This document shows, one piece after another, positions 2,947 to 10,158 of a stretch of 64,000 nt of DNA. Location of the stretch: positions 310,001 to 374,000 of IMG/VR virus record IMGVR_UViG_3300032116_000001; one strand, 5' to 3'. The notes below the pieces were generated by a model. The model was given only the letters and a program-made list of their open reading frames with translations, searched no databases and was not told the DNA's origin. Positions within the stretch are counted from its first letter, which is position 1, and every line of letters starts with the position of its first letter. Both the position numbers and the translations under genes were made by a program.

Positions 2947-3033
2947 AGGGGTATAGTTTAATGGCAAAACACTGGTCTCCAAAACCAGGGACAGTTAATG
3001 CAAGTGGGGGTTCAAGTCCCCCTGCCTCTGCCA
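2947..3033 (+). tRNA. tRNA-Trp(CCA) with enlarged variable region
   Basis: anticodon arm CTGGT-ctCCAaa-ACCAG, T arm GGGGG-TTCAAGT-CCCCC, encoded CCA. Confidence 0.85.
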
Positions 3034-3113
3034 AATTATCGAAGAGATTCGTATGTATATTGAAAATTAAATAGGTTTAAATGTAATATGAGGGCAAAAG
3101 CCCTCAGTGATTT

Positions 3114-3484
3114 ACGTTGTGCGCAAATGGTATGTATTCAGTTCGATTCTGAAGTTCCCTTGGTGGGTGAGTGGTTCGAGTCCACAACAACATGATTTTC
3201 TGAGCCAACAGGAATGTGTTGAAAGGCAGCAAATAGCGGCGGCGCATGGGGTTCGATTCCCTAACGCACAACGTATTGGCAATTTGAAGGGGCTAAACGC
3301 CACGGAAGCACAACTTCTTTGCTGAGCAGCCGTTGTTAAATAGCCCCCGATGATATTTTCCGATAAAATCTGATCGGTAATCAGTTCGAAGAGAACTCTA
3401 ATCGGATGCGGAGGGGAAATGTGGGTTCGAGTCCCACGCAGGCACTTGTGTCTGGTCGTTTAATGGTAGGACGCCCCGTGGGGT
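3114..3484 (+). ncRNA. candidate structured RNA with four T-loop hairpins
   Basis: 10-bp closing helix 3114-3123/3265-3274; TTCGA(T/G)T-capped hairpins at 3137, 3171, 3247, 3421. Confidence 0.55.
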
Positions 3485-3570
3485 AGAGAAGGATCACGCA
3501 CGTGATCAGAAGTAAAACGCGGCGTCGCAATTCCACGCCGATCTTCGAAACAGTATGAGGAAAGTAAAGT

Positions 3571-3645
3571 GCCGTCGTAGCTCAGTGGTAGAGCACGCCC
3601 CTGATAAGGGCGGGGTCATAGGTTCGAATCCTATCGGTGGCACCA
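3571..3645 (+). tRNA. tRNA-Ile(GAT)
   Basis: canonical cloverleaf, CGCCC-ctGATaa-GGGCG, CCA end. Confidence 0.95.
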
Positions 3646-3694
3646 TGTTTGCAAAATCTTTTGTGAATTATGATCGTATTAAAGTTGGAACATT

Positions 3695-4105
3695 ATGAAT
3701 TTAAGAACCAAATACCAAAGTAATTTTATTGTAATGCCTGAACATTGCAATTTTAGGATGCCACAAATTTTTGGCGGAGCTTTTATGGCAAAGCTTGATC
3801 TTTGTGCAGCCGCGGCTTGTAGCGAACTTCTTCAGTTTTCAGAATCGTCCTGTGACAACGCAGTAACATATAAGGTATTGGAAATAACTTTTCACAAAGC
3901 TGCTCAGATGGGAGATCAAATTTTCTTCGAAGCTGAAATTATTGAATTAAGAAACAATTCAATCACAGTTCAAGTAGAGGCGTATCGACAACCAAGAGAT
4001 CAAAAATTCCCTGAACGCATTCACACGGCATCGGCAAAATTTGTGTTTGTGACATTGCAGGGGGACAAGTATACTCCGCATGGATTAAAGCTTACTTCAT
4101 CATAA
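3695..4105 (+). CDS. hotdog-fold acyl-CoA thioesterase (YciA-like)
   Basis: VMPEHCN...IFGGAFMAKLD, ITFHKAAQMGD, AKFVFV. Confidence 0.8.
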   Translation: MNLRTKYQSNFIVMPEHCNFRMPQIFGGAFMAKLDLCAAAACSELLQFSESSCDNAVTYKVLEITFHKAAQMGDQIFFEAEIIELRNNSITVQVEAYRQPRDQKFPERIHTASAKFVFVTLQGDKYTPHGLKLTSS

Positions 4106-4159
4106 AAACGTATTTGGTAGAGCATACCCCCGAAAGAGGGCGAGGTTTGTGTAACAAAT

Positions 4160-4236
4160 GGGGCATTGGTGTAATTTGGTGAGCACAAAGGTCTGAAAAA
4201 CCTTGGGTGAGGGTTCAATTCCCTCTAGCCCCACCA
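4160..4236 (+). tRNA. tRNA-Phe(GAA)
   Basis: AAGGT-ctGAAaa-ACCTT, T arm, CCA; two mismatches at the base of the acceptor stem. Confidence 0.85.
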
Positions 4237-4244
4237 AAATTTTC

Positions 4245-4321
4245 GGCCCCATCGTCTACGATGGCTGTGACACCACCATCTCACGGTGGAAAACGGAGAT
4301 CGACACTCCGTGGGGTCACCA
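4245..4321 (+). tRNA. tRNA-Glu(CTC)
   Basis: CCACC-atCTCac-GGTGG, T-loop ATCGACA, CCA. Confidence 0.85.
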
Positions 4322-4374
4322 AATTTTCATTTGTTAGTCTGGTGCTAATCTACTGATATGGAGAACATAATTAG

Positions 4375-4752
4375 ATGAACAGATGGGAATACGCAAACTT
4401 CGAAGTGCTGAAAGGCAAGACTTTGAGAGAGGTCTTTTACTCCAAGAAAGAGGAAAAAATCTCCTTTATAGTAGACGATCAGGAAGCATATCACATGTCA
4501 CACTTTCAGGATTGCTGCGAGGCAGTTTGGGTGGAAGACATATGTGGCGACTTGAACGATTTGGTCGGAACGCCGATTCTTTTCGCAGAAAAGTCTTCTT
4601 CGGAAGACACATCTGTAGAATGGACGTTCTATAGAATCGGTACAATCAAGGGGACGGTGGTGATTCGCTGGTGTGGCGAACTCGACACTTGCTACTCTAT
4701 CGAAGTGAGCTTCTATCGTACTTTTGGCGAAGACACACCGCCCAAGACTTAG
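4375..4752 (+). CDS. conserved phage hypothetical protein
   Basis: HFQDCCEAVWVEDICGDLNDLVGTPIL motif, recognised from phage proteins. Confidence 0.75.
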   Translation: MNRWEYANFEVLKGKTLREVFYSKKEEKISFIVDDQEAYHMSHFQDCCEAVWVEDICGDLNDLVGTPILFAEKSSSEDTSVEWTFYRIGTIKGTVVIRWCGELDTCYSIEVSFYRTFGEDTPPKT

Positions 4753-4857
4753 CAGTGATTAAACACCTACTGCGATGACTGATGGATAGACATCTGACCC
4801 GAGCGGAAAGGCGCTCAAGTCGGGGGAGGCGAGAAGGTGAAGCCTCCCTTATCGAGC

Positions 4858-4934
4858 GGCCCGCTCGTCTACGTTGGCTAGGACTCCGCGTTTTCAGCGC
4901 GGCAAACAGAGATCGACACTCTGGCGGGTCACCA
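4858..4934 (+). tRNA. tRNA-Glu(TTC)
   Basis: CCGCG-ttTTCag-CGCGG, T-loop ATCGACA, CCA. Confidence 0.9.
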
Positions 4935-5006
4935 TTTTTAATCAGATTTCATAAAATCGCTAATTTTTTGTGATTCTGATCGTATTATAGATAACAGAAC
5001 ATTTTC

Positions 5007-5082
5007 GGGGCCATAGCTCAGTTGGGAGAGCACCTGCTTTGCAAGCAGGGGGTCGAGAGTTCGAGTCTCTCTGGCTCCACCA
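5007..5082 (+). tRNA. tRNA-Ala(TGC)
   Basis: canonical cloverleaf with G3:U70, CCA. Confidence 0.95.
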
Positions 5083-5190
5083 CGAACGGTTCTAAGGTAG
5101 GACATTAAATATTGATGCGGGGCGAACGGACAATAAAAAGTCAATGTGCCAACCAAACCATGGAAGTCTGATGGCATCAATGAAAAAAAT

Positions 5191-5267
5191 CGGGGATTAG
5201 CTCAGTTTGGTGGAGCGGGCGCTTTGGGAGCGTCAGGTCGCAGGTTCGAGTCCTGTATCCCCGACCA
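5191..5267 (+). tRNA. tRNA-Pro(TGG)
   Basis: GGCGC-ttTGGga-GCGTC, CCA. Confidence 0.95.
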
Positions 5268-5316
5268 TTTTTCAAAAAATCTTTGTTCATATTATATTTA
5301 TTGTACAAAAAACAAT

Positions 5317-6078
5317 ATGAACAAAAAGACATCTATAATATGGACTGAATCCAAAGAAAATTTTCAACTTCGAGTTAATAATTGCACGAGCATTGCGGGC
5401 ATAATACGCAGCTTTGGCCTTTCTATAAGTGGTGCTCAACATAGCCGAATCAAACAGCGCATTGCTCAGGATTGTATAGATATTTCTCATATTCCTTTGG
5501 GTATCGGAGCAAGTAAAGGCTGCAAGAGATTAAATAAGCGAATTCCTTTGGAAGAATATTTATCAAATAATCGGCCCATTCAATCACACGATTTAAAAAA
5601 ACGATTGTTAAGAGAAAATATTTTTGTTTATGAGTGTAGTGAATGCAAATTAGGATCATTATGGAATGGCAAGCCGATTTCATTACAGCTTGATCATATT
5701 AATGGCAATAATTGTGATAACAGATTGGTTAATCTTCGAATTTTGTGTCCAAATTGTCACTCTCAAACTCCAACATTTAGCGGAAAACACAAAGCGAAGA
5801 AGTGTTTGGATTGTGGTGGTAAAATTAGCAGGCCTACATCTACAAGATGTAAAAAATGCCATATACACAACAATCGATCACAGCCACCAAAGCCTTCTAA
5901 GTACATAAAATTTGGATTAGAAAAAGAAGAACTTGAGATGATAATATGGAAAAAGCCAACTTGTCAAATTGCAAAAGAATTTGGTGTTTCAGACAAAGCT
6001 GTTGAAAAAAGATGTAAAAAGCTAGGAGTTTCTAAGCCTCCAAGAGGTTATTGGAGAAAGCTGGAAACCGCAAAATAA
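5317..6078 (+). CDS. free-standing HNH homing endonuclease
   Basis: CSEC...LQLDHINGNNCDNRLVNLRILCPNCHSQT; start moved to the ATG downstream of tRNA-Pro. Confidence 0.85.
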   Translation: MNKKTSIIWTESKENFQLRVNNCTSIAGIIRSFGLSISGAQHSRIKQRIAQDCIDISHIPLGIGASKGCKRLNKRIPLEEYLSNNRPIQSHDLKKRLLRENIFVYECSECKLGSLWNGKPISLQLDHINGNNCDNRLVNLRILCPNCHSQTPTFSGKHKAKKCLDCGGKISRPTSTRCKKCHIHNNRSQPPKPSKYIKFGLEKEELEMIIWKKPTCQIAKEFGVSDKAVEKRCKKLGVSKPPRGYWRKLETAK

Positions 6079-6084
6079 AAATGT

Positions 6085-6159
6085 GGGCGTGTGACGCAAT
6101 GGTAGCGTGGGTGCATTACAGGCATCAAGTTGCAGGTTCGAATCCTGTCATGCCCACCA
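6085..6159 (+). tRNA. tRNA-Val(TAC)
   Basis: GGTGC-atTACag-GCATC, CCA. Confidence 0.9.
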
Positions 6160-6251
6160 CCGATTAGTATAATTTTAAATAACCGAAAAGGTTTAGAACA
6201 GTAGCATCCAGGTAATTTCAGTTCAGGGCTCTGCTGCTGTTCTAAAAACGC

Positions 6252-6326
6252 GGGCGGTTAGCTCAGTGGTAGAGCACTACATTGACATTGTAGGGGTCAC
6301 AGGTTCGAAACCTGTACCGCCCACCA
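6252..6326 (+). tRNA. tRNA-Val(GAC)
   Basis: canonical cloverleaf, ttGACat loop, CCA. Confidence 0.95.
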
Positions 6327-6343
6327 AAATATTTTGTTTAAAT

Positions 6344-6421
6344 CTGGGCGTAGTTCAGTTTGGTTAGAATGCTACTCTGGGAGAGTAGAGGTCATTGGTT
6401 CAAATCCAATCGCTCAGACCA
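6344..6421 (+). tRNA. tRNA-Pro(GGG)
   Basis: CTACT-ctGGGag-AGTAG, CCA. Confidence 0.95.
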
Positions 6422-6486
6422 TTTTTACACATTGAAACAAAATTCAAACGGTATGCGTATAATAAATATACAAACAATTTGATTGC

Positions 6487-6565
6487 TTGACGGAAGTTTT
6501 GCGGATGAAACGCTGGGCCGATGCATACCCCCAGAGATCGCAGGTTCGAATCCTGCCTGTCTTGC
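6487..6565 (+). ncRNA. tRNA-like RNA with 12-nt anticodon loop
   Basis: D stem GTTT/AAAC, CTGGG-CCGATGCATACC-CCCAG, T arm GCAGG-TTCGAAT-CCTGC, partial acceptor stem, no CCA. Confidence 0.5.
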
Positions 6566-6569
6566 AATC

Positions 6570-6626
6570 GGGACCGAAGGTCAGACTTCTGCATCAGTCA
6601 TTGGTTCAACTCCGATAGGTCCCACA
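6570..6626 (+). ncRNA. D-armless mini tRNA-like RNA
   Basis: GGGACC/GGTCCC acceptor, GACT-TCTGCATC-AGTC arm, ATTGG-TTCAACT-CCGAT T arm. Confidence 0.5.
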
Positions 6627-6710
6627 AGTTTCTCGTACATTGCGGTCTGAGATGACCGCCCCGATCATAAAATAAAACAATCAATGGAAAGCGACTATCA
6701 CTATACCATT

Positions 6711-6802
6711 GGGTGATGACTCCCCTGCATGTCTGTAAAACATGTGCCGCATCAGAACGTGGGGAAATATGGCGAGAGGTGAAATTCCTCCATCACCCAC
6801 CA
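6711..6802 (+). ncRNA. non-canonical tRNA-Tyr(GTA)-like RNA (8/4 stem, no D arm)
   Basis: GGGTGATG/CATCACCC, CATGT-ctGTAaa-ACATG, GAGG-TGAAATT-CCTC, ACCA end. Confidence 0.65.
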
Positions 6803-6847
6803 CGACATTCAATGCGAAGGCATTAACGACCATAACAGATAAAGCAA

Positions 6848-6932
6848 GGGAGTATCGCATAGAGGCAATTGCGGGAGACTGTAAATCTCCTCTGGAAACA
6901 GTTCGTAGGTTCGAGTCCTGCTGCTCCCACCA
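6848..6932 (+). tRNA. tRNA-Tyr(GTA)
   Basis: GGAGA-ctGTAaa-TCTCC, long variable arm, CCA. Confidence 0.95.
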
Positions 6933-7217: not shown

Positions 7218-8396
7218 GTGATTGCAGTAGAAAGACATCATATTAAAGCAACGAAAGATTTACTCAGGCTGACAAGCCTGAGTAAAGAACTCTATAATAG
7301 ATGCAATTTCTTAATGAGACAAGCATGGTTTAAGAAAGAAAGACTGCCAGATATTAGCATTCTTATTAAAGAAACTCAACATTTGAATTGTTTCAAGAAT
7401 CTACATAATACAAAAACTGCAAAACAAACAATCCGTCAAGTATTGACGGATTGGAGTAACTATAGAAAGGCACTTACTGCCTACGGCAGAGATAAATCTA
7501 AATTCTTAGGATGTCCTAAGCCTCCTCACTATAAAAAGAAACTATCTCAAGTGATTTTCTATAATGAAACAATTAAAGGAGGACAGAGCGGAAAGCCAAA
7601 GGCTTTCCTTACTCCAACAAATAATTGCTTCAGTATTAAATCAGATAAACAGTACAAACAAGTAGTAGTTACTCCAAAAACTTTTGGTTTTATGATAGAA
7701 GTTCAATATGAACTTCCTAATATCCCAAAGCCGAAAACTAAGAAAAACAATTTTTGTTGCATTGACATAGGATTGAATAATCTAGCAACGATAACTTCAG
7801 ATAAGCATAGTCCAATACTTATCAACGGTCGTATAGTTAAATCATTCAATCAACAATACAACAAGAACGTCAGTAAGAAATCATCTCGAAAGAGATATTT
7901 TAGACTGGAAAATTACTTCCATCATGTCAGTAAAATCATTGTGGAAAATTGTGTTAAACACAATCTAGGAACTATTGTCATTGGCAAAAATGATGGATGG
8001 AAAACAGGGATGAAACTTGGAAAGAAAACAAATCAGAATTTCTGTTCTGTTCCCTTCTGTAATTTATTTCAGAAGATTCAGTACAAGGCTAACGCATTGG
8101 GAATTGATGTTATCTTTACTGAAGAATCCTACACAAGTCAAGCATCATTTCTGGATAGGGATGAAATCCCTGTCTGGAAGAAAGGAAGGCAGAATGAATA
8201 TGAGTTCTCTGGAACTCGTATTAAAAGAGGCTTGTATCGCAGTGCCGAAGGCACTCTGCTTAATGCAGATGCAAATGGCAGTGCAAACATTGGACGAAAA
8301 GTATTCCCAAACGACGCCTTCGGCGTTGAATGGGATAGGAGCGTTGCCGAAACGCCAGTTGTCGTTAATCCATTAAGACAAGTGTGCGCAGCCTAA
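7218..8396 (+). CDS. tnpB: IS200/IS605-family TnpB RNA-guided nuclease (no Zn finger)
   Basis: CIDIGLNNLA, IVIGKNDGWK, TEESYTSQAS, LNADANGSANI. Confidence 0.9.
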   Translation: MIAVERHHIKATKDLLRLTSLSKELYNRCNFLMRQAWFKKERLPDISILIKETQHLNCFKNLHNTKTAKQTIRQVLTDWSNYRKALTAYGRDKSKFLGCPKPPHYKKKLSQVIFYNETIKGGQSGKPKAFLTPTNNCFSIKSDKQYKQVVVTPKTFGFMIEVQYELPNIPKPKTKKNNFCCIDIGLNNLATITSDKHSPILINGRIVKSFNQQYNKNVSKKSSRKRYFRLENYFHHVSKIIVENCVKHNLGTIVIGKNDGWKTGMKLGKKTNQNFCSVPFCNLFQKIQYKANALGIDVIFTEESYTSQASFLDRDEIPVWKKGRQNEYEFSGTRIKRGLYRSAEGTLLNADANGSANIGRKVFPNDAFGVEWDRSVAETPVVVNPLRQVCAA

Positions 8397-9391: not shown

Positions 9392-9460
9392 GCCGTTCGT
9401 AGCTCAGAGGCAGAGCGCCAGTGCACAGGGAGACGTGGTTCGAATCCGCCGACGGCACCA
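9392..9460 (+). ncRNA. tRNA-like RNA with collapsed anticodon arm
   Basis: intact D arm (GCTC/GAGC), T-loop TTCGAAT, GCCGT/ACGGC+ACCA; weak anticodon arm around TGC. Confidence 0.55.
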
Positions 9461-9498
9461 GTTTTAAACATTTAAACCTATTTATTCGAAAAGCCATT

Positions 9499-10158
9499 AT
9501 GAAAAAGTTCAAACAATTTGATGTTTTGGTGTCTGACACTATTGAGAAGGTTCTTGCTCAAATTGGATCACAAACAATCTTGGTGACTTCAGTAAAGGGC
9601 GATGTTGTTTCAGTTAAGGGCAATTCTTTAAGACTTCGAACATTTAAAGAAACGGGAGTGATGTGCCCACTCTGCGAAGCGCAGGCAACACATTGGGTAT
9701 TGACTTACACAAGTGAGGATAAGGCTCATTTAAATTTAATGGGGCCTGACGGGTTGTTATTCACACACGATCACGTAACTCCGCTAAACCAAGGCGGACA
9801 AGACAATCTTGCAAACTCACACACTATGTGCTTTGATTGTAATTACTTTCTTGGGGATAAGTCGCATTTTTATGGCGAGGCGTCCCAGAACATTAAATTA
9901 TTGCTTGAAACAACAAGAGTGGTCTATAATAGTGAAAATCAGGCCTGGCGCGTGAGTGTCAACAAGATGGGGCACACGGCGAGGCGACCCAAGAGGCTAT
10001 ATTCGGATTTTTATAGTTTTGGCGAGGCTTTTAAGTTTGCTAAAGACCTTGTTGATAACCCAAGAATAGATGAATTTATTGGACCTGTAATGTTGCGGCC
10101 AGAGCATACCCTTCGTGTTACTGCGCTTGAAGATTGGCTTAAAAATAATTCAATTTAA
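9499..10158 (+). CDS. HNH endonuclease family protein
   Basis: CPLC...FTHDHVTPLNQGGQDNLANSHTMCFDCN; start at MKKFKQ. Confidence 0.75.
   Translation: MKKFKQFDVLVSDTIEKVLAQIGSQTILVTSVKGDVVSVKGNSLRLRTFKETGVMCPLCEAQATHWVLTYTSEDKAHLNLMGPDGLLFTHDHVTPLNQGGQDNLANSHTMCFDCNYFLGDKSHFYGEASQNIKLLLETTRVVYNSENQAWRVSVNKMGHTARRPKRLYSDFYSFGEAFKFAKDLVDNPRIDEFIGPVMLRPEHTLRVTALEDWLKNNSI

What the first reader, a model, noticed from the sequence alone, without database searches (positions are those of the whole stretch)
3421..3484. Circularly permuted tRNA-like module
Seen in order: T arm GTGGG-TTCGAGT-CCCAC, acceptor 3' strand GCAGGCA, linker CTTG, acceptor 5' strand TGTCTGG (6 of 7 pairs), TC, D arm GTTT-AATGGTA-GGAC, then a stub CCCC-GTG-GGGT. 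The 3' half precedes the 5' half. Known: permuted tRNA genes occur in some algae and archaea and two-piece tmRNAs in bacteria. Here the 4-nt linker is too short for normal end maturation, suggesting an uncleavable elbow mimic within a longer RNA (structured flanks 3289-3560).
Basis: partly seen in the sequence, partly recalled or inferred. Interest (0 to 1): 0.65.

Follow-up and report, generated by a model that had tools for sequence, protein, structure and literature searches.

The report
Orphan Y-RNA-like tRNA mimic in phage
Inside the tRNA gene cluster of a 379-kb jumbo phage sits one "inside-out" tRNA look-alike with a capped acceptor end and no anticodon loop. It has the same build as the tRNA-like domain of bacterial YrlA Y RNAs, but this phage lacks the Ro60 protein those RNAs normally partner.

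Summary
Window 3413-3477 (+) reads, in exact tRNA register: 4-bp closing helix, 4-nt variable loop, T arm, acceptor-like hairpin (6 bp plus one G.G, CTTG loop), UC, D arm, G26, closing strand. All elbow and tertiary nucleotides are present.

It is not a novel kind. This is the architecture of the YrlA (bacterial Y RNA) tRNA-like domain, which the literature already describes as a circularly permuted tRNA with a closed acceptor stem.

A covariance model (R1) built only from 14 other phage loci scores the site at 51.7 bits (E about 2e-12). It is the only such site in the 379-kb genome; tRNA-tRNA junctions score 30.6 bits or less.

In all five related phage records that encode a TROVE/Ro60 protein, the module lies 0.2-3 kb upstream on the same strand. 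This genome (CheckV 100% complete) has no TROVE gene by three searches, like four other complete phage genomes carrying such modules.

The flanks are not significantly structured, no close homologue exists and expression could not be checked. A selectively neutral tRNA-duplication relic remains a live rival.

Verdict: new variant of a known kind, an orphan YrlA-type tRNA mimic in a phage tRNA array. Interest is moderate.

The parts
3413..3416 (+). GGGG, 5' strand of the closing helix (equivalent to the anticodon-stem 3' strand)
   Evidence: Pairs with CCCC 3474-3477 in the minimum-energy fold of 3405-3490 and in the constrained fold (with 12-nt flanks z -2.0, p 0.05). The R1 alignment pairs 3 of 4 positions in its own register.
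3417..3420 (+). AAAT, equivalent of the variable loop. U3420 is the position-48 pyrimidine that can form a Levitt pair with A3463.
   Evidence: Direct reading. T is nearly invariant in this column of the family alignment. The Levitt U:A pair is documented for YrlA (10.1101/312249).
3421..3437 (+). T arm: 5-bp stem GTGGG/CCCAC and loop TTCGAGT
   Evidence: The stem covaries in the family (98.6% of cells paired).
3438..3455 (+). Closed acceptor-like hairpin: 6 bp, plus G.G at the 7:66 position, with a CTTG loop at 3445-3448
   Evidence: The equivalent helix covaries at all 8 positions in the family.
3456..3457 (+). UC linker (tRNA positions 8-9; U8 is present)
   Evidence: U is conserved here in the family.
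3458..3472 (+). D arm: GTTT/GGAC stem and loop AATGGTA, carrying A14, A15, G18, G19 and A21
3473..3477 (+). G26 equivalent plus CCCC, the 3' strand of the closing helix
3385..3392 (+). TTCGAAGA. Candidate counterpart of the YrlA 5' motif GNCGAAN0-1G, and 5' strand of a possible terminal helix. Uncertain.
   Evidence: 8-bp perfect complement to 3542-3549 (I3; used in the minimum-energy fold). The TROVE-linked relative G003 has TTCGAATG about 20 nt upstream of its T stem. However, 3377-3389 is a 12/13 copy of 3134-3146.
3542..3549 (+). TCTTCGAA, possible 3' strand of the terminal helix. Uncertain.
   Evidence: Not statistically supported.
3492..3507 (+). Hairpin GATCAC-GCAC-GTGATC in the downstream flank. 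Whether it belongs to the RNA is unknown.
3520..3540 (+). Hairpin CGGCGT-(9 nt)-ACGCCG in the downstream flank. Whether it belongs to the RNA is unknown.

Best explanation
Window 3413-3477 (+) encodes a YrlA-type tRNA mimic. It is a tRNA whose acceptor end is capped by a tetraloop and whose anticodon loop is missing, so the RNA chain enters and leaves through a short anticodon-stem-like helix.

The T loop and D loop keep every nucleotide needed for the tRNA elbow: U8-A14-A21, A15:U48, G18/G19 with U55/C56, T54-A58 and G53-C61. The RNA should therefore fold into the L-shape. It cannot be aminoacylated, having no free CCA end, and it cannot decode.

It lies on the same strand as the 12 ARAGORN-called tRNA genes of array 2947-6932, with no terminator-like site between them. 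It is probably made from the same transcript.

By analogy with Y RNAs, it most likely presents a tRNA elbow to tRNA-binding proteins as a scaffold, tether or decoy. The phage has no Ro60/Rsr gene, so the partner would be either a host Ro60 or a Ro-independent elbow-binding factor. The second option could tie in with the phage's RNA-repair set (RtcB, Rnl1 and Rnl2).

Shown here: the architecture, family membership by covariance model, the Ro60 linkage of relatives, and the absence of Ro60 in this genome. Inferred: transcription, processing, folding, the partner and the function.
For: - Exact tRNA register of all parts.
- The Rfam YrlA core (model positions 30-81) aligns T arm, closed hairpin, linker and D arm to 3420-3472.
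- Model R1, built from 14 other viral loci without the window, scores 3409-3481 at 51.7 bits, E 2.4e-12. It is the single top hit in the genome, and tRNA junctions score 30.6 bits or less.
- The family structure covaries: 82% of cells paired against 58% in shuffles, and 18 of 21 pairs show double changes.
- Copies outside the training set and outside the search pattern score 38-59 bits with perfect hairpins.
- One relative (L060) matches Rfam YrlA end to end at 41.9 bits.
- In all 5 related records that carry a TROVE gene, the module is 0.2-3 kb upstream on the same strand. Their R1 scores of 43-79 bits bracket ours.
- The module is intact while its upstream flank looks like decayed tRNA debris, which suggests selective preservation.
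- The literature describes YrlA as a circularly permuted tRNA with a closed acceptor loop, a 6-bp acceptor stem in Salmonella and a U:A Levitt pair (10.1101/312249; PMC4201824).
Against: - No TROVE/Ro60 in the CheckV-complete genome, by the Pfam model, by tblastn with two phage Ro60 proteins, and by a profile of five phage Ro60 proteins against all six-frame ORFs.
- The Rfam YrlA score is 18.5 bits against a gathering score of 69, and only the core aligns. tRNA-tRNA junctions reach similar Rfam scores.
- There is no convincing terminal stem or canonical GNCGAAN0-1G motif.
- The flanks are not significantly structured.
- No close homologue exists, so conservation or covariation of this particular copy cannot be shown.
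- R1's training loci were fished with this module's own T-loop and D-loop words, which inflates its score by an unknown amount.
Confidence: 0.6

Rival explanations
1. Neutral relic. The module is the junction of two decayed tRNA or tRNA-like genes, for example a tandem duplicate of one tRNA. In that case the acceptor and anticodon-stem complementarity is inherited rather than selected, and the RNA has no function of its own.
For: - The 3040-3570 interval is littered with tRNA-derived pieces: T-arm-like hairpins at 3141-3153, 3172-3185 and 3247-3263.
- The flank 3377-3389 is a 12/13 copy of 3134-3146 (p about 0.002).
- CCCC-GU-GGGG downstream looks like an anticodon stem that has lost its loop.
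- Some family members (L006, L060) continue into weak tRNA-like units.
- There is no Ro60, no significant flank structure and no conserved homologue.
Against: - All three stems and every tertiary nucleotide of the module are intact, while the rest of the putative donor genes is unrecognisable. No tRNA-model hit overlaps 3196-3570.
- Neither half matches any extant tRNA of the genome beyond a generic T arm.
- The same closed architecture recurs and covaries in unrelated phages and sits next to Ro60 genes there.
- The 4-nt capping loop, with no discriminator or spacer, is unlike the tRNA junctions of this genome, which score 30.6 bits or less with R1.
Confidence: 0.22
2. The module is one domain of a larger composite structured RNA of roughly 165 nt (about 3385-3549), or one including the odd tRNA-like unit at 3113-3275. 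That RNA would have a function unrelated to Y RNAs.
For: - An 8-bp perfect helix, 3385-3392 with 3542-3549, encloses the module and two further hairpins in the minimum-energy fold.
- An 11-bp perfect helix, 3113-3123 with 3265-3275, encloses a neighbouring unit with two T arms.
Against: - Folding energies are not better than shuffles.
- TTCGAA is palindromic, so such pairings arise easily.
- No Rfam family matches.
- No homologues exist to test covariation.
Confidence: 0.1
3. A genuine circularly permuted tRNA gene of the Cyanidioschyzon or Thermofilum type. Its transcript would be circularised, perhaps by the phage RtcB, and then opened in the acceptor loop to give a working tRNA.
For: - The 3' half precedes the 5' half.
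- Intervening sequences as short as 1 bp are known (PMC3978253).
- The phage encodes RtcB and two other RNA ligases.
Against: - There is no anticodon loop. The closing helix has 4 bp, then A3412.G3478, and the adjoining flank bases give no U33 or 7-nt loop.
- No bulge-helix-bulge motif is evident by eye; no formal search was run. From general knowledge, phages and bacteria lack the splicing endonuclease that the pathway needs (PMC3978253 describes the pathway).
- The acceptor stem has a G.G at 7:66.
- Relatives are linked to Ro60, not to decoding.
Confidence: 0.03
4. The acceptor piece and start of a two-piece (permuted) tmRNA.
For: The gene order (T arm, 3' acceptor strand, then 5' acceptor strand) is that of permuted ssrA genes.
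Against: - ARAGORN, which detects tmRNA genes, finds none in the window.
- Rfam tmRNA_permuted gives no hit at the locus.
- There is no encoded CCA, no G3.U70, and a full D arm is present.
- I noticed no tag reading frame, though I did not search for one specifically.
Confidence: 0.01

Closest known systems
YrlA, the bacterial and phage Y RNA tRNA-like domain (Rfam RF02553; Chen et al. 2014, PMC4201824; Wang et al. 2018, 10.1101/312249, PDB 6CU1)
   Same: The order is the same: variable loop, T stem-loop, closed acceptor-like stem-loop, U-N linker, D stem-loop, all on an anticodon-stem-like helix. The acceptor stem is 6 bp, as in Salmonella YrlA. The U:A Levitt pair and all elbow nucleotides are present. 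There is no CCA end and no anticodon loop. YrlA genes are known to lie beside tRNA genes in some bacteria. Phage relatives of this module sit just upstream of Ro60 genes.
   Different: No Ro60/TROVE gene anywhere in this complete phage genome. There is no canonical GNCGAAN0-1G motif and no recognisable Ro-binding terminal stem. The linker is UC rather than the conserved UA. The D stem is GUUU/GGAC rather than GCUC/GAGC. The Rfam score is far below gathering (18.5 against 69).
Circularly permuted tRNA genes of red and green algae and Thermofilum pendens (PMC3978253)
   Same: The 3' half is encoded upstream of the 5' half, and a short intervening sequence joins the acceptor strands.
   Different: Those genes encode complete tRNAs. 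A bulge-helix-bulge junction is cut and ligated to restore a loop, and the acceptor loop is then opened by RNase P and tRNase Z. Here there is no anticodon loop, no evident bulge-helix-bulge motif and no sign of a decoding function.
Two-piece (permuted) tmRNA of alpha-proteobacteria and cyanobacteria (Rfam RF04321)
   Same: A permuted tRNA-like domain in which the T arm and 3' acceptor strand precede the 5' acceptor strand.
   Different: tmRNA has a CCA end, a G.U alanine identity pair, a reduced D region, pseudoknots and a tag reading frame. None of these is present here.
Tandem tRNA gene junctions, the known false positives of YrlA searches (PMC4201824)
   Same: A T arm plus 3' acceptor strand is followed by a 5' acceptor strand plus D arm. 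Such junctions reach similar Rfam YrlA scores.
   Different: At junctions the two acceptor strands are not complementary and are separated by a discriminator, CCA and spacer. Both neighbours are complete tRNAs. Here the strands pair, the loop is 4 nt, and neither neighbour is a tRNA.

Membership tests
YrlA / Y RNA-like (RF02553) | T stem-loop with a tRNA-like T loop | tested here: met
   GTGGG/TTCGAGT/CCCAC at 3421-3437, aligned to YrlA model positions 31-47 and to R1.
YrlA / Y RNA-like (RF02553) | [quoted passage not shown] | tested here: met
   3438-3455: 6 bp plus G.G, with a CTTG loop. The Salmonella acceptor stem is also 6 bp (10.1101/312249).
YrlA / Y RNA-like (RF02553) | D stem-loop with GG, a U at the linker, a pyrimidine ending the variable loop, and a Levitt pair | tested here: met
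   D arm 3458-3472, U3456, and U3420 with A3463. The linker is UC rather than the usual UA.
YrlA / Y RNA-like (RF02553) | Encoded within about 4 kb of a Ro60/TROVE gene on the same strand (Chen et al. 2014 criterion) | tested here: not met
   No TROVE gene in the whole 378,848-bp genome, which CheckV rates 100% complete. The criterion is met by five related phage modules.
YrlA / Y RNA-like (RF02553) | GNCGAAN0-1G motif near the 5' end (presumed Ro60 contact) | tested here: inconclusive
   TTCGAAG lies at 3385-3391, 36 nt before the T stem, and the leading G is out of register. The TROVE-linked relative G003 has TTCGAATG. The segment is also a copy of 3134-3146.
YrlA / Y RNA-like (RF02553) | 5' and 3' ends pair into a terminal stem | tested here: inconclusive
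   A 4-bp closing helix is supported. Beyond it there is only one 8-bp candidate, 3385-3392 with 3542-3549, which is not significant.
YrlA / Y RNA-like (RF02553) | Rfam gathering score of 69 bits | tested here: not met
   18.5 bits, local to model positions 30-81. For calibration, a Ro60-adjacent phage example scores only 24.7 bits and another phage relative 41.9 bits.
YrlA / Y RNA-like (RF02553) | Binds Ro60/Rsr; carries pseudouridine 55 and dihydrouridine | not testable with these tools
   Needs immunoprecipitation and modification mapping.
Phage permuted tRNA-like modules (model R1, built here) | Full-length match to closing helix, T arm, closed hairpin, 2 nt and D arm | tested here: met
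   51.7 bits, model positions 1-74, E 2.4e-12 in the genome. Independent members score 38-59 bits and TROVE-linked ones 43-79 bits.
Circularly permuted tRNA gene | Encodes a complete tRNA, including the anticodon stem-loop restored at a bulge-helix-bulge junction | tested here: not met
   By inspection: only a 4-bp stem, then an A.G mismatch, with no 7-nt loop or U33 in the flanks. No tRNA-model hit overlaps the locus. No formal bulge-helix-bulge search was run.
Circularly permuted tRNA gene | 3' half upstream of 5' half, joined by a short intervening sequence (1-74 bp) | tested here: met
   A 4-nt CTTG linker. The range comes from PMC3978253.
Two-piece tmRNA | Detected by ARAGORN or the Rfam permuted tmRNA model; CCA end, G3.U70 and a tag reading frame | tested here: not met
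   No tmRNA call. No RF04321 hit at the locus. Position 3:70 is U.G, and no CCA is encoded.

The most novel reading that the evidence does not exclude
Closed, permuted tRNA mimics of the YrlA type form a Ro60-independent class of phage RNAs carried inside tRNA arrays. At least four complete phage genomes have strong modules (R1 of 51.7 bits or more) and no Ro60: this one, G006, G010 and G019. G020 has weaker matches (38 bits or less) and also no Ro60. In this reading they act as tRNA-elbow decoys or adaptors. They might titrate host tRNA-targeting defence nucleases or tRNA-binding sensors, hijack a host Ro60-exonuclease machine, or steer the phage's own RNA-repair ligases.
Probability: 0.25. 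Interest if true: 0.65.

Novelty: new variant of a known kind. Interest (0 to 1): 0.4.

Why it matters
Y RNAs of the YrlA type have been defined and searched for through their neighbour, Ro60. This case, and at least three further complete phage genomes found on the way (a fourth, G020, has only weak matches), show the same tRNA-mimic domain without any phage Ro60, embedded among tRNA genes.

If these copies are functional, phages use non-decoding tRNA look-alikes alongside real tRNAs. That bears on how phages counter tRNA-directed host defences and on what the still-unknown elbow-binding effector of YrlA RNAs is.

There is also a practical point. tRNA finders and Rfam at gathering threshold miss these modules. 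Even Ro60-adjacent phage copies score only about 25-42 bits, so they are probably under-annotated.

If this copy is only a relic, it still illustrates how such mimics can arise from tRNA duplications.

Tried and rejected
- **Exact 32-mer of the module in IMG/VR:** no match.
- **Degenerate T-arm/D-arm pattern in JGI metagenomes:** only the window's own contig, Ga0315903_10000009. No close homologue was found, so there is no covariation test for this copy.
- **Synteny through neighbouring proteins:**
  - The thioesterase gave one non-syntenic locus without tRNAs.
  - DUF7448 and a 697-aa protein gave nothing.
- **Relatives of the record:** 'relatives' is not available for a virus record.
- **Host inference through the TnpB-like protein:** only a 36%-identical hit in an archaeal MAG contig, which is uninformative.
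- **RtcB co-occurrence with modules:** 2 of 14 records, so no tight link.
- **Shared neighbour proteins around orphan modules in five genomes:** only HNH homing endonucleases.
- **Partner halves:** a search for an upstream 5' half or a downstream T arm that would complete an ordinary or intron-containing tRNA found none for the window.
- **Origin from an extant tRNA of the genome:** no match beyond a generic T arm.
- **Extended flank structure:** not significant.
- **Rejected readings:** group I permuted intron-exon and tmRNA. There are no Rfam hits, although a permuted intron would escape the model and no re-permuted scan was possible.
- **Not used:** the large protein searches, structure prediction and complex prediction; none was needed for an RNA element.
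- **Other notes:** Table 11 was used throughout.

Full report
**Setting.** The window is bases 310,001-374,000 of a 378,848-bp IMG/VR virus record that CheckV rates 100% complete. This jumbo phage has 32 tRNA-model hits above the Rfam threshold and 34 ARAGORN tRNA calls. It also encodes RtcB and both Rnl1- and Rnl2-type RNA ligases. The finding lies in a + strand tRNA array spanning 2947-6932, between a doubtful ARAGORN 'tRNA-Ser' (3113-3195) and a good tRNA-Ile (3571-3645). The array also holds an HNH endonuclease ORF, and a TnpB-like ORF follows it.

**Observation.**
- T arm 3421-3437.
- GCAGGCA 3438-3444, CTTG 3445-3448 and TGTCTGG 3449-3455, giving six pairs plus G3438.G3455.
- UC, then the D arm 3458-3472, then G and CCCC.

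Together with CCCC 3474-3477 this closes the module in perfect tRNA register: a 4-nt variable loop on one side and a position-26 G on the other. The minimum-energy fold of 3405-3490 is exactly this permuted cloverleaf.

Every nucleotide used by the tRNA elbow and core is in place: U8, A14, A15 with U48, G18, G19, A21, G53-C61, U54-A58, U55 and C56 (read).

A composite pattern scan finds this single site in the whole genome, against 0.15 per shuffled genome.

**What it resembles.** Rfam's YrlA (Y RNA-like) model aligns its core, positions 30-81 (T arm, closed hairpin, linker, D arm), to 3420-3472. The score is only 18.5 bits, and junctions between adjacent tRNAs in this genome reach up to 25 bits. 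Chen et al. warned of exactly this false positive (PMC4201824). I therefore looked for the discriminating features: complementarity of the two acceptor strands, and closure of the module.

**A family in other phages.** I scanned IMG/VR for the module's T-loop and D-loop words at the right spacing, which mostly returned tRNA junctions.
- About a dozen loci instead had a perfect 7-9-bp hairpin. It starts immediately after the T stem and ends exactly 2 nt before the D stem, with a 3-7-nt loop and a 4-6-bp closing helix outside.
- Fourteen such loci were aligned as A1. All four helices covary: 82% of cells paired against 58% in shuffles, and 18 of 21 pairs carry double changes. The hairpin helix was a selection criterion, so its covariation is partly circular.
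- Model R1, built from these loci without the window, found further copies that were not selected by my pattern. These score 38-59 bits and again have perfect hairpins, often as a second copy in tandem.
- A second scan with another T-loop word added 11 more loci.

R1 scores window 3409-3481 at 51.7 bits over its full length, E about 2e-12. This is the best hit in the genome by 21 bits over any tRNA junction. One caveat applies: the T-loop and D-loop words are shared by construction, so part of the score is ascertainment.

**Link to Ro60.** One relative (L060) matches Rfam YrlA end to end at 41.9 bits. Of the 32 related viral records tested for TROVE (14 + 18), five encode a TROVE/Ro60 protein. 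In all five the module lies 0.2-3 kb upstream on the same strand. That is Chen et al.'s operational definition of a YrlA gene. A Ro60-adjacent copy scores only 24.7 bits with the Rfam model, so the Rfam threshold is not informative for phage versions.

[quoted passage not shown] It reports a 6-bp stem in Salmonella, a U:A Levitt pair and no anticodon loop (10.1101/312249). That description fits the present module point for point.

**What differs here.** The phage has no Ro60. Three searches all found nothing: the Pfam TROVE model, tblastn with two phage Ro60 proteins, and a profile of five phage Ro60 proteins against every six-frame ORF of 60 aa or more (best hit 5.9 bits).

It is not alone. 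Complete records G006 (467 kb), G010 (104 kb) and G019 (223 kb) carry strong modules without TROVE, and G020 carries weaker ones. Orphan modules share no neighbouring protein except HNH endonucleases. RtcB co-occurs in only 2 of 14 records.

The canonical 5' motif GNCGAAN0-1G is absent. TTCGAAG at 3385-3391 resembles the TTCGAATG of a Ro60-linked relative, and it can pair over 8 bp with 3542-3549. However, that stretch is also a 12/13 copy of 3134-3146 in the neighbouring odd tRNA-like unit. The flanks as a whole fold no better than shuffles.

**Rivals.**
- *Relic.* The main alternative is that the module is a relic of duplicated tRNA genes, with its complementarity inherited. The surrounding 500 nt is indeed rich in tRNA debris. 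Against this, only the module is intact, and neither half matches an extant tRNA. No tRNA-model hit overlaps it, no partner half completes an ordinary tRNA, and the same closed design is maintained by covariation elsewhere.
- *True permuted tRNA gene.* This is unlikely because there is no anticodon loop or bulge-helix-bulge junction.
- *tmRNA.* Excluded.

**Limits.** No close homologue of this copy exists in IMG/VR or the JGI metagenomes. The host is unknown, so a host Ro60 cannot be assessed.

**Verdict.** This is a real, non-chance, permuted tRNA-like module of the YrlA type. It is a new variant of a known kind because it is orphaned from Ro60 and lacks a recognisable Ro-binding stem. Its function is inferred, not shown. 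Confidence that it is a functional tRNA mimic is 0.6, and that it is a relic 0.22.

Noticed in passing
window 3113-3275: An 11-bp perfect inverted repeat (3113-3123 with 3265-3275) encloses a 163-nt unit. The unit contains a D-loop-like AATGGTA, an 'anticodon' arm whose loop is T-loop-like (TTCGATT), and two T-arm hairpins (3172-3185 and 3247-3263). ARAGORN calls 3113-3195 tRNA-Ser(CGA), but the Rfam tRNA model gives no hit even at E 10. It could be a disrupted or duplicated class II tRNA, or a composite tRNA-like RNA.
   Followed up: partly
window 2947-3033: tRNA-Trp(CCA) of 87 nt with a 17-nt variable region, which is unusual for a class I tRNA. Its Rfam tRNA score is 59.8 bits.
   Followed up: no
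window 4245-4321 and 4858-4934: Two ARAGORN-only 'tRNA-Glu' genes (CTC and TTC anticodons). Both have an atypical T loop (ATCGACA, with A in place of T54) and an encoded CCA. The Rfam tRNA model does not report them at E 10.
   Followed up: no
window 6487-6625: Two adjacent degenerate tRNA-like units: 33.5 bits at 6487-6564 and 16.9 bits at 6570-6624. The second appears by eye to lack a normal D arm. Rfam YrlA gives a spurious full-length 19.7-bit hit across their junction.
   Followed up: no
window 5146-6078, 7218-8396, 9421-10158: Mobile-element genes in and just after the tRNA array: an HNH endonuclease ORF between tRNA-Pro and tRNA-Val, a TnpB-like ORF (OrfB_IS605 plus Cas12f1-like TNB), and a second HNH ORF. 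Homologues of the first HNH lie near orphan modules in two other phages (G010 and G020).
   Followed up: partly
G000:C1:294784-294858 (outside the window): A tRNA with anticodon CUA, which ARAGORN labels 'Pyl' and Rfam scores at 69 bits. It is a candidate amber suppressor. TAG still ends 19 of 218 long ORFs, and reading through TAG lengthens ORFs least of the three stop codons, so there is no sign of genome-wide recoding.
   Followed up: partly
G000:C1:282643-283749, 166910-167542, 377695-378387 (outside the window): The phage encodes RtcB, an Rnl1-type RNA ligase and an Rnl2-type RNA ligase. This is a full RNA-repair set, but it has no Ro60.
   Followed up: partly
L127 102-176 and 250-322 (G003); L128 (G010); L129 (G007): In other phages the permuted modules often come as tandem pairs 70-200 nt apart, reminiscent of YrlA/YrlB. 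In G003 both copies sit just upstream of the Ro60 gene.
   Followed up: partly
L139, L144, L169, L195, L213, L216, L228: A recurring variant occurs in small viral or proviral records of 12-46 kb: a T arm followed by CACCC-(about 11 nt)-GGGTG and a D arm. None of these records has TROVE. I did not check whether these are modules or close-set tRNA pairs.
   Followed up: no
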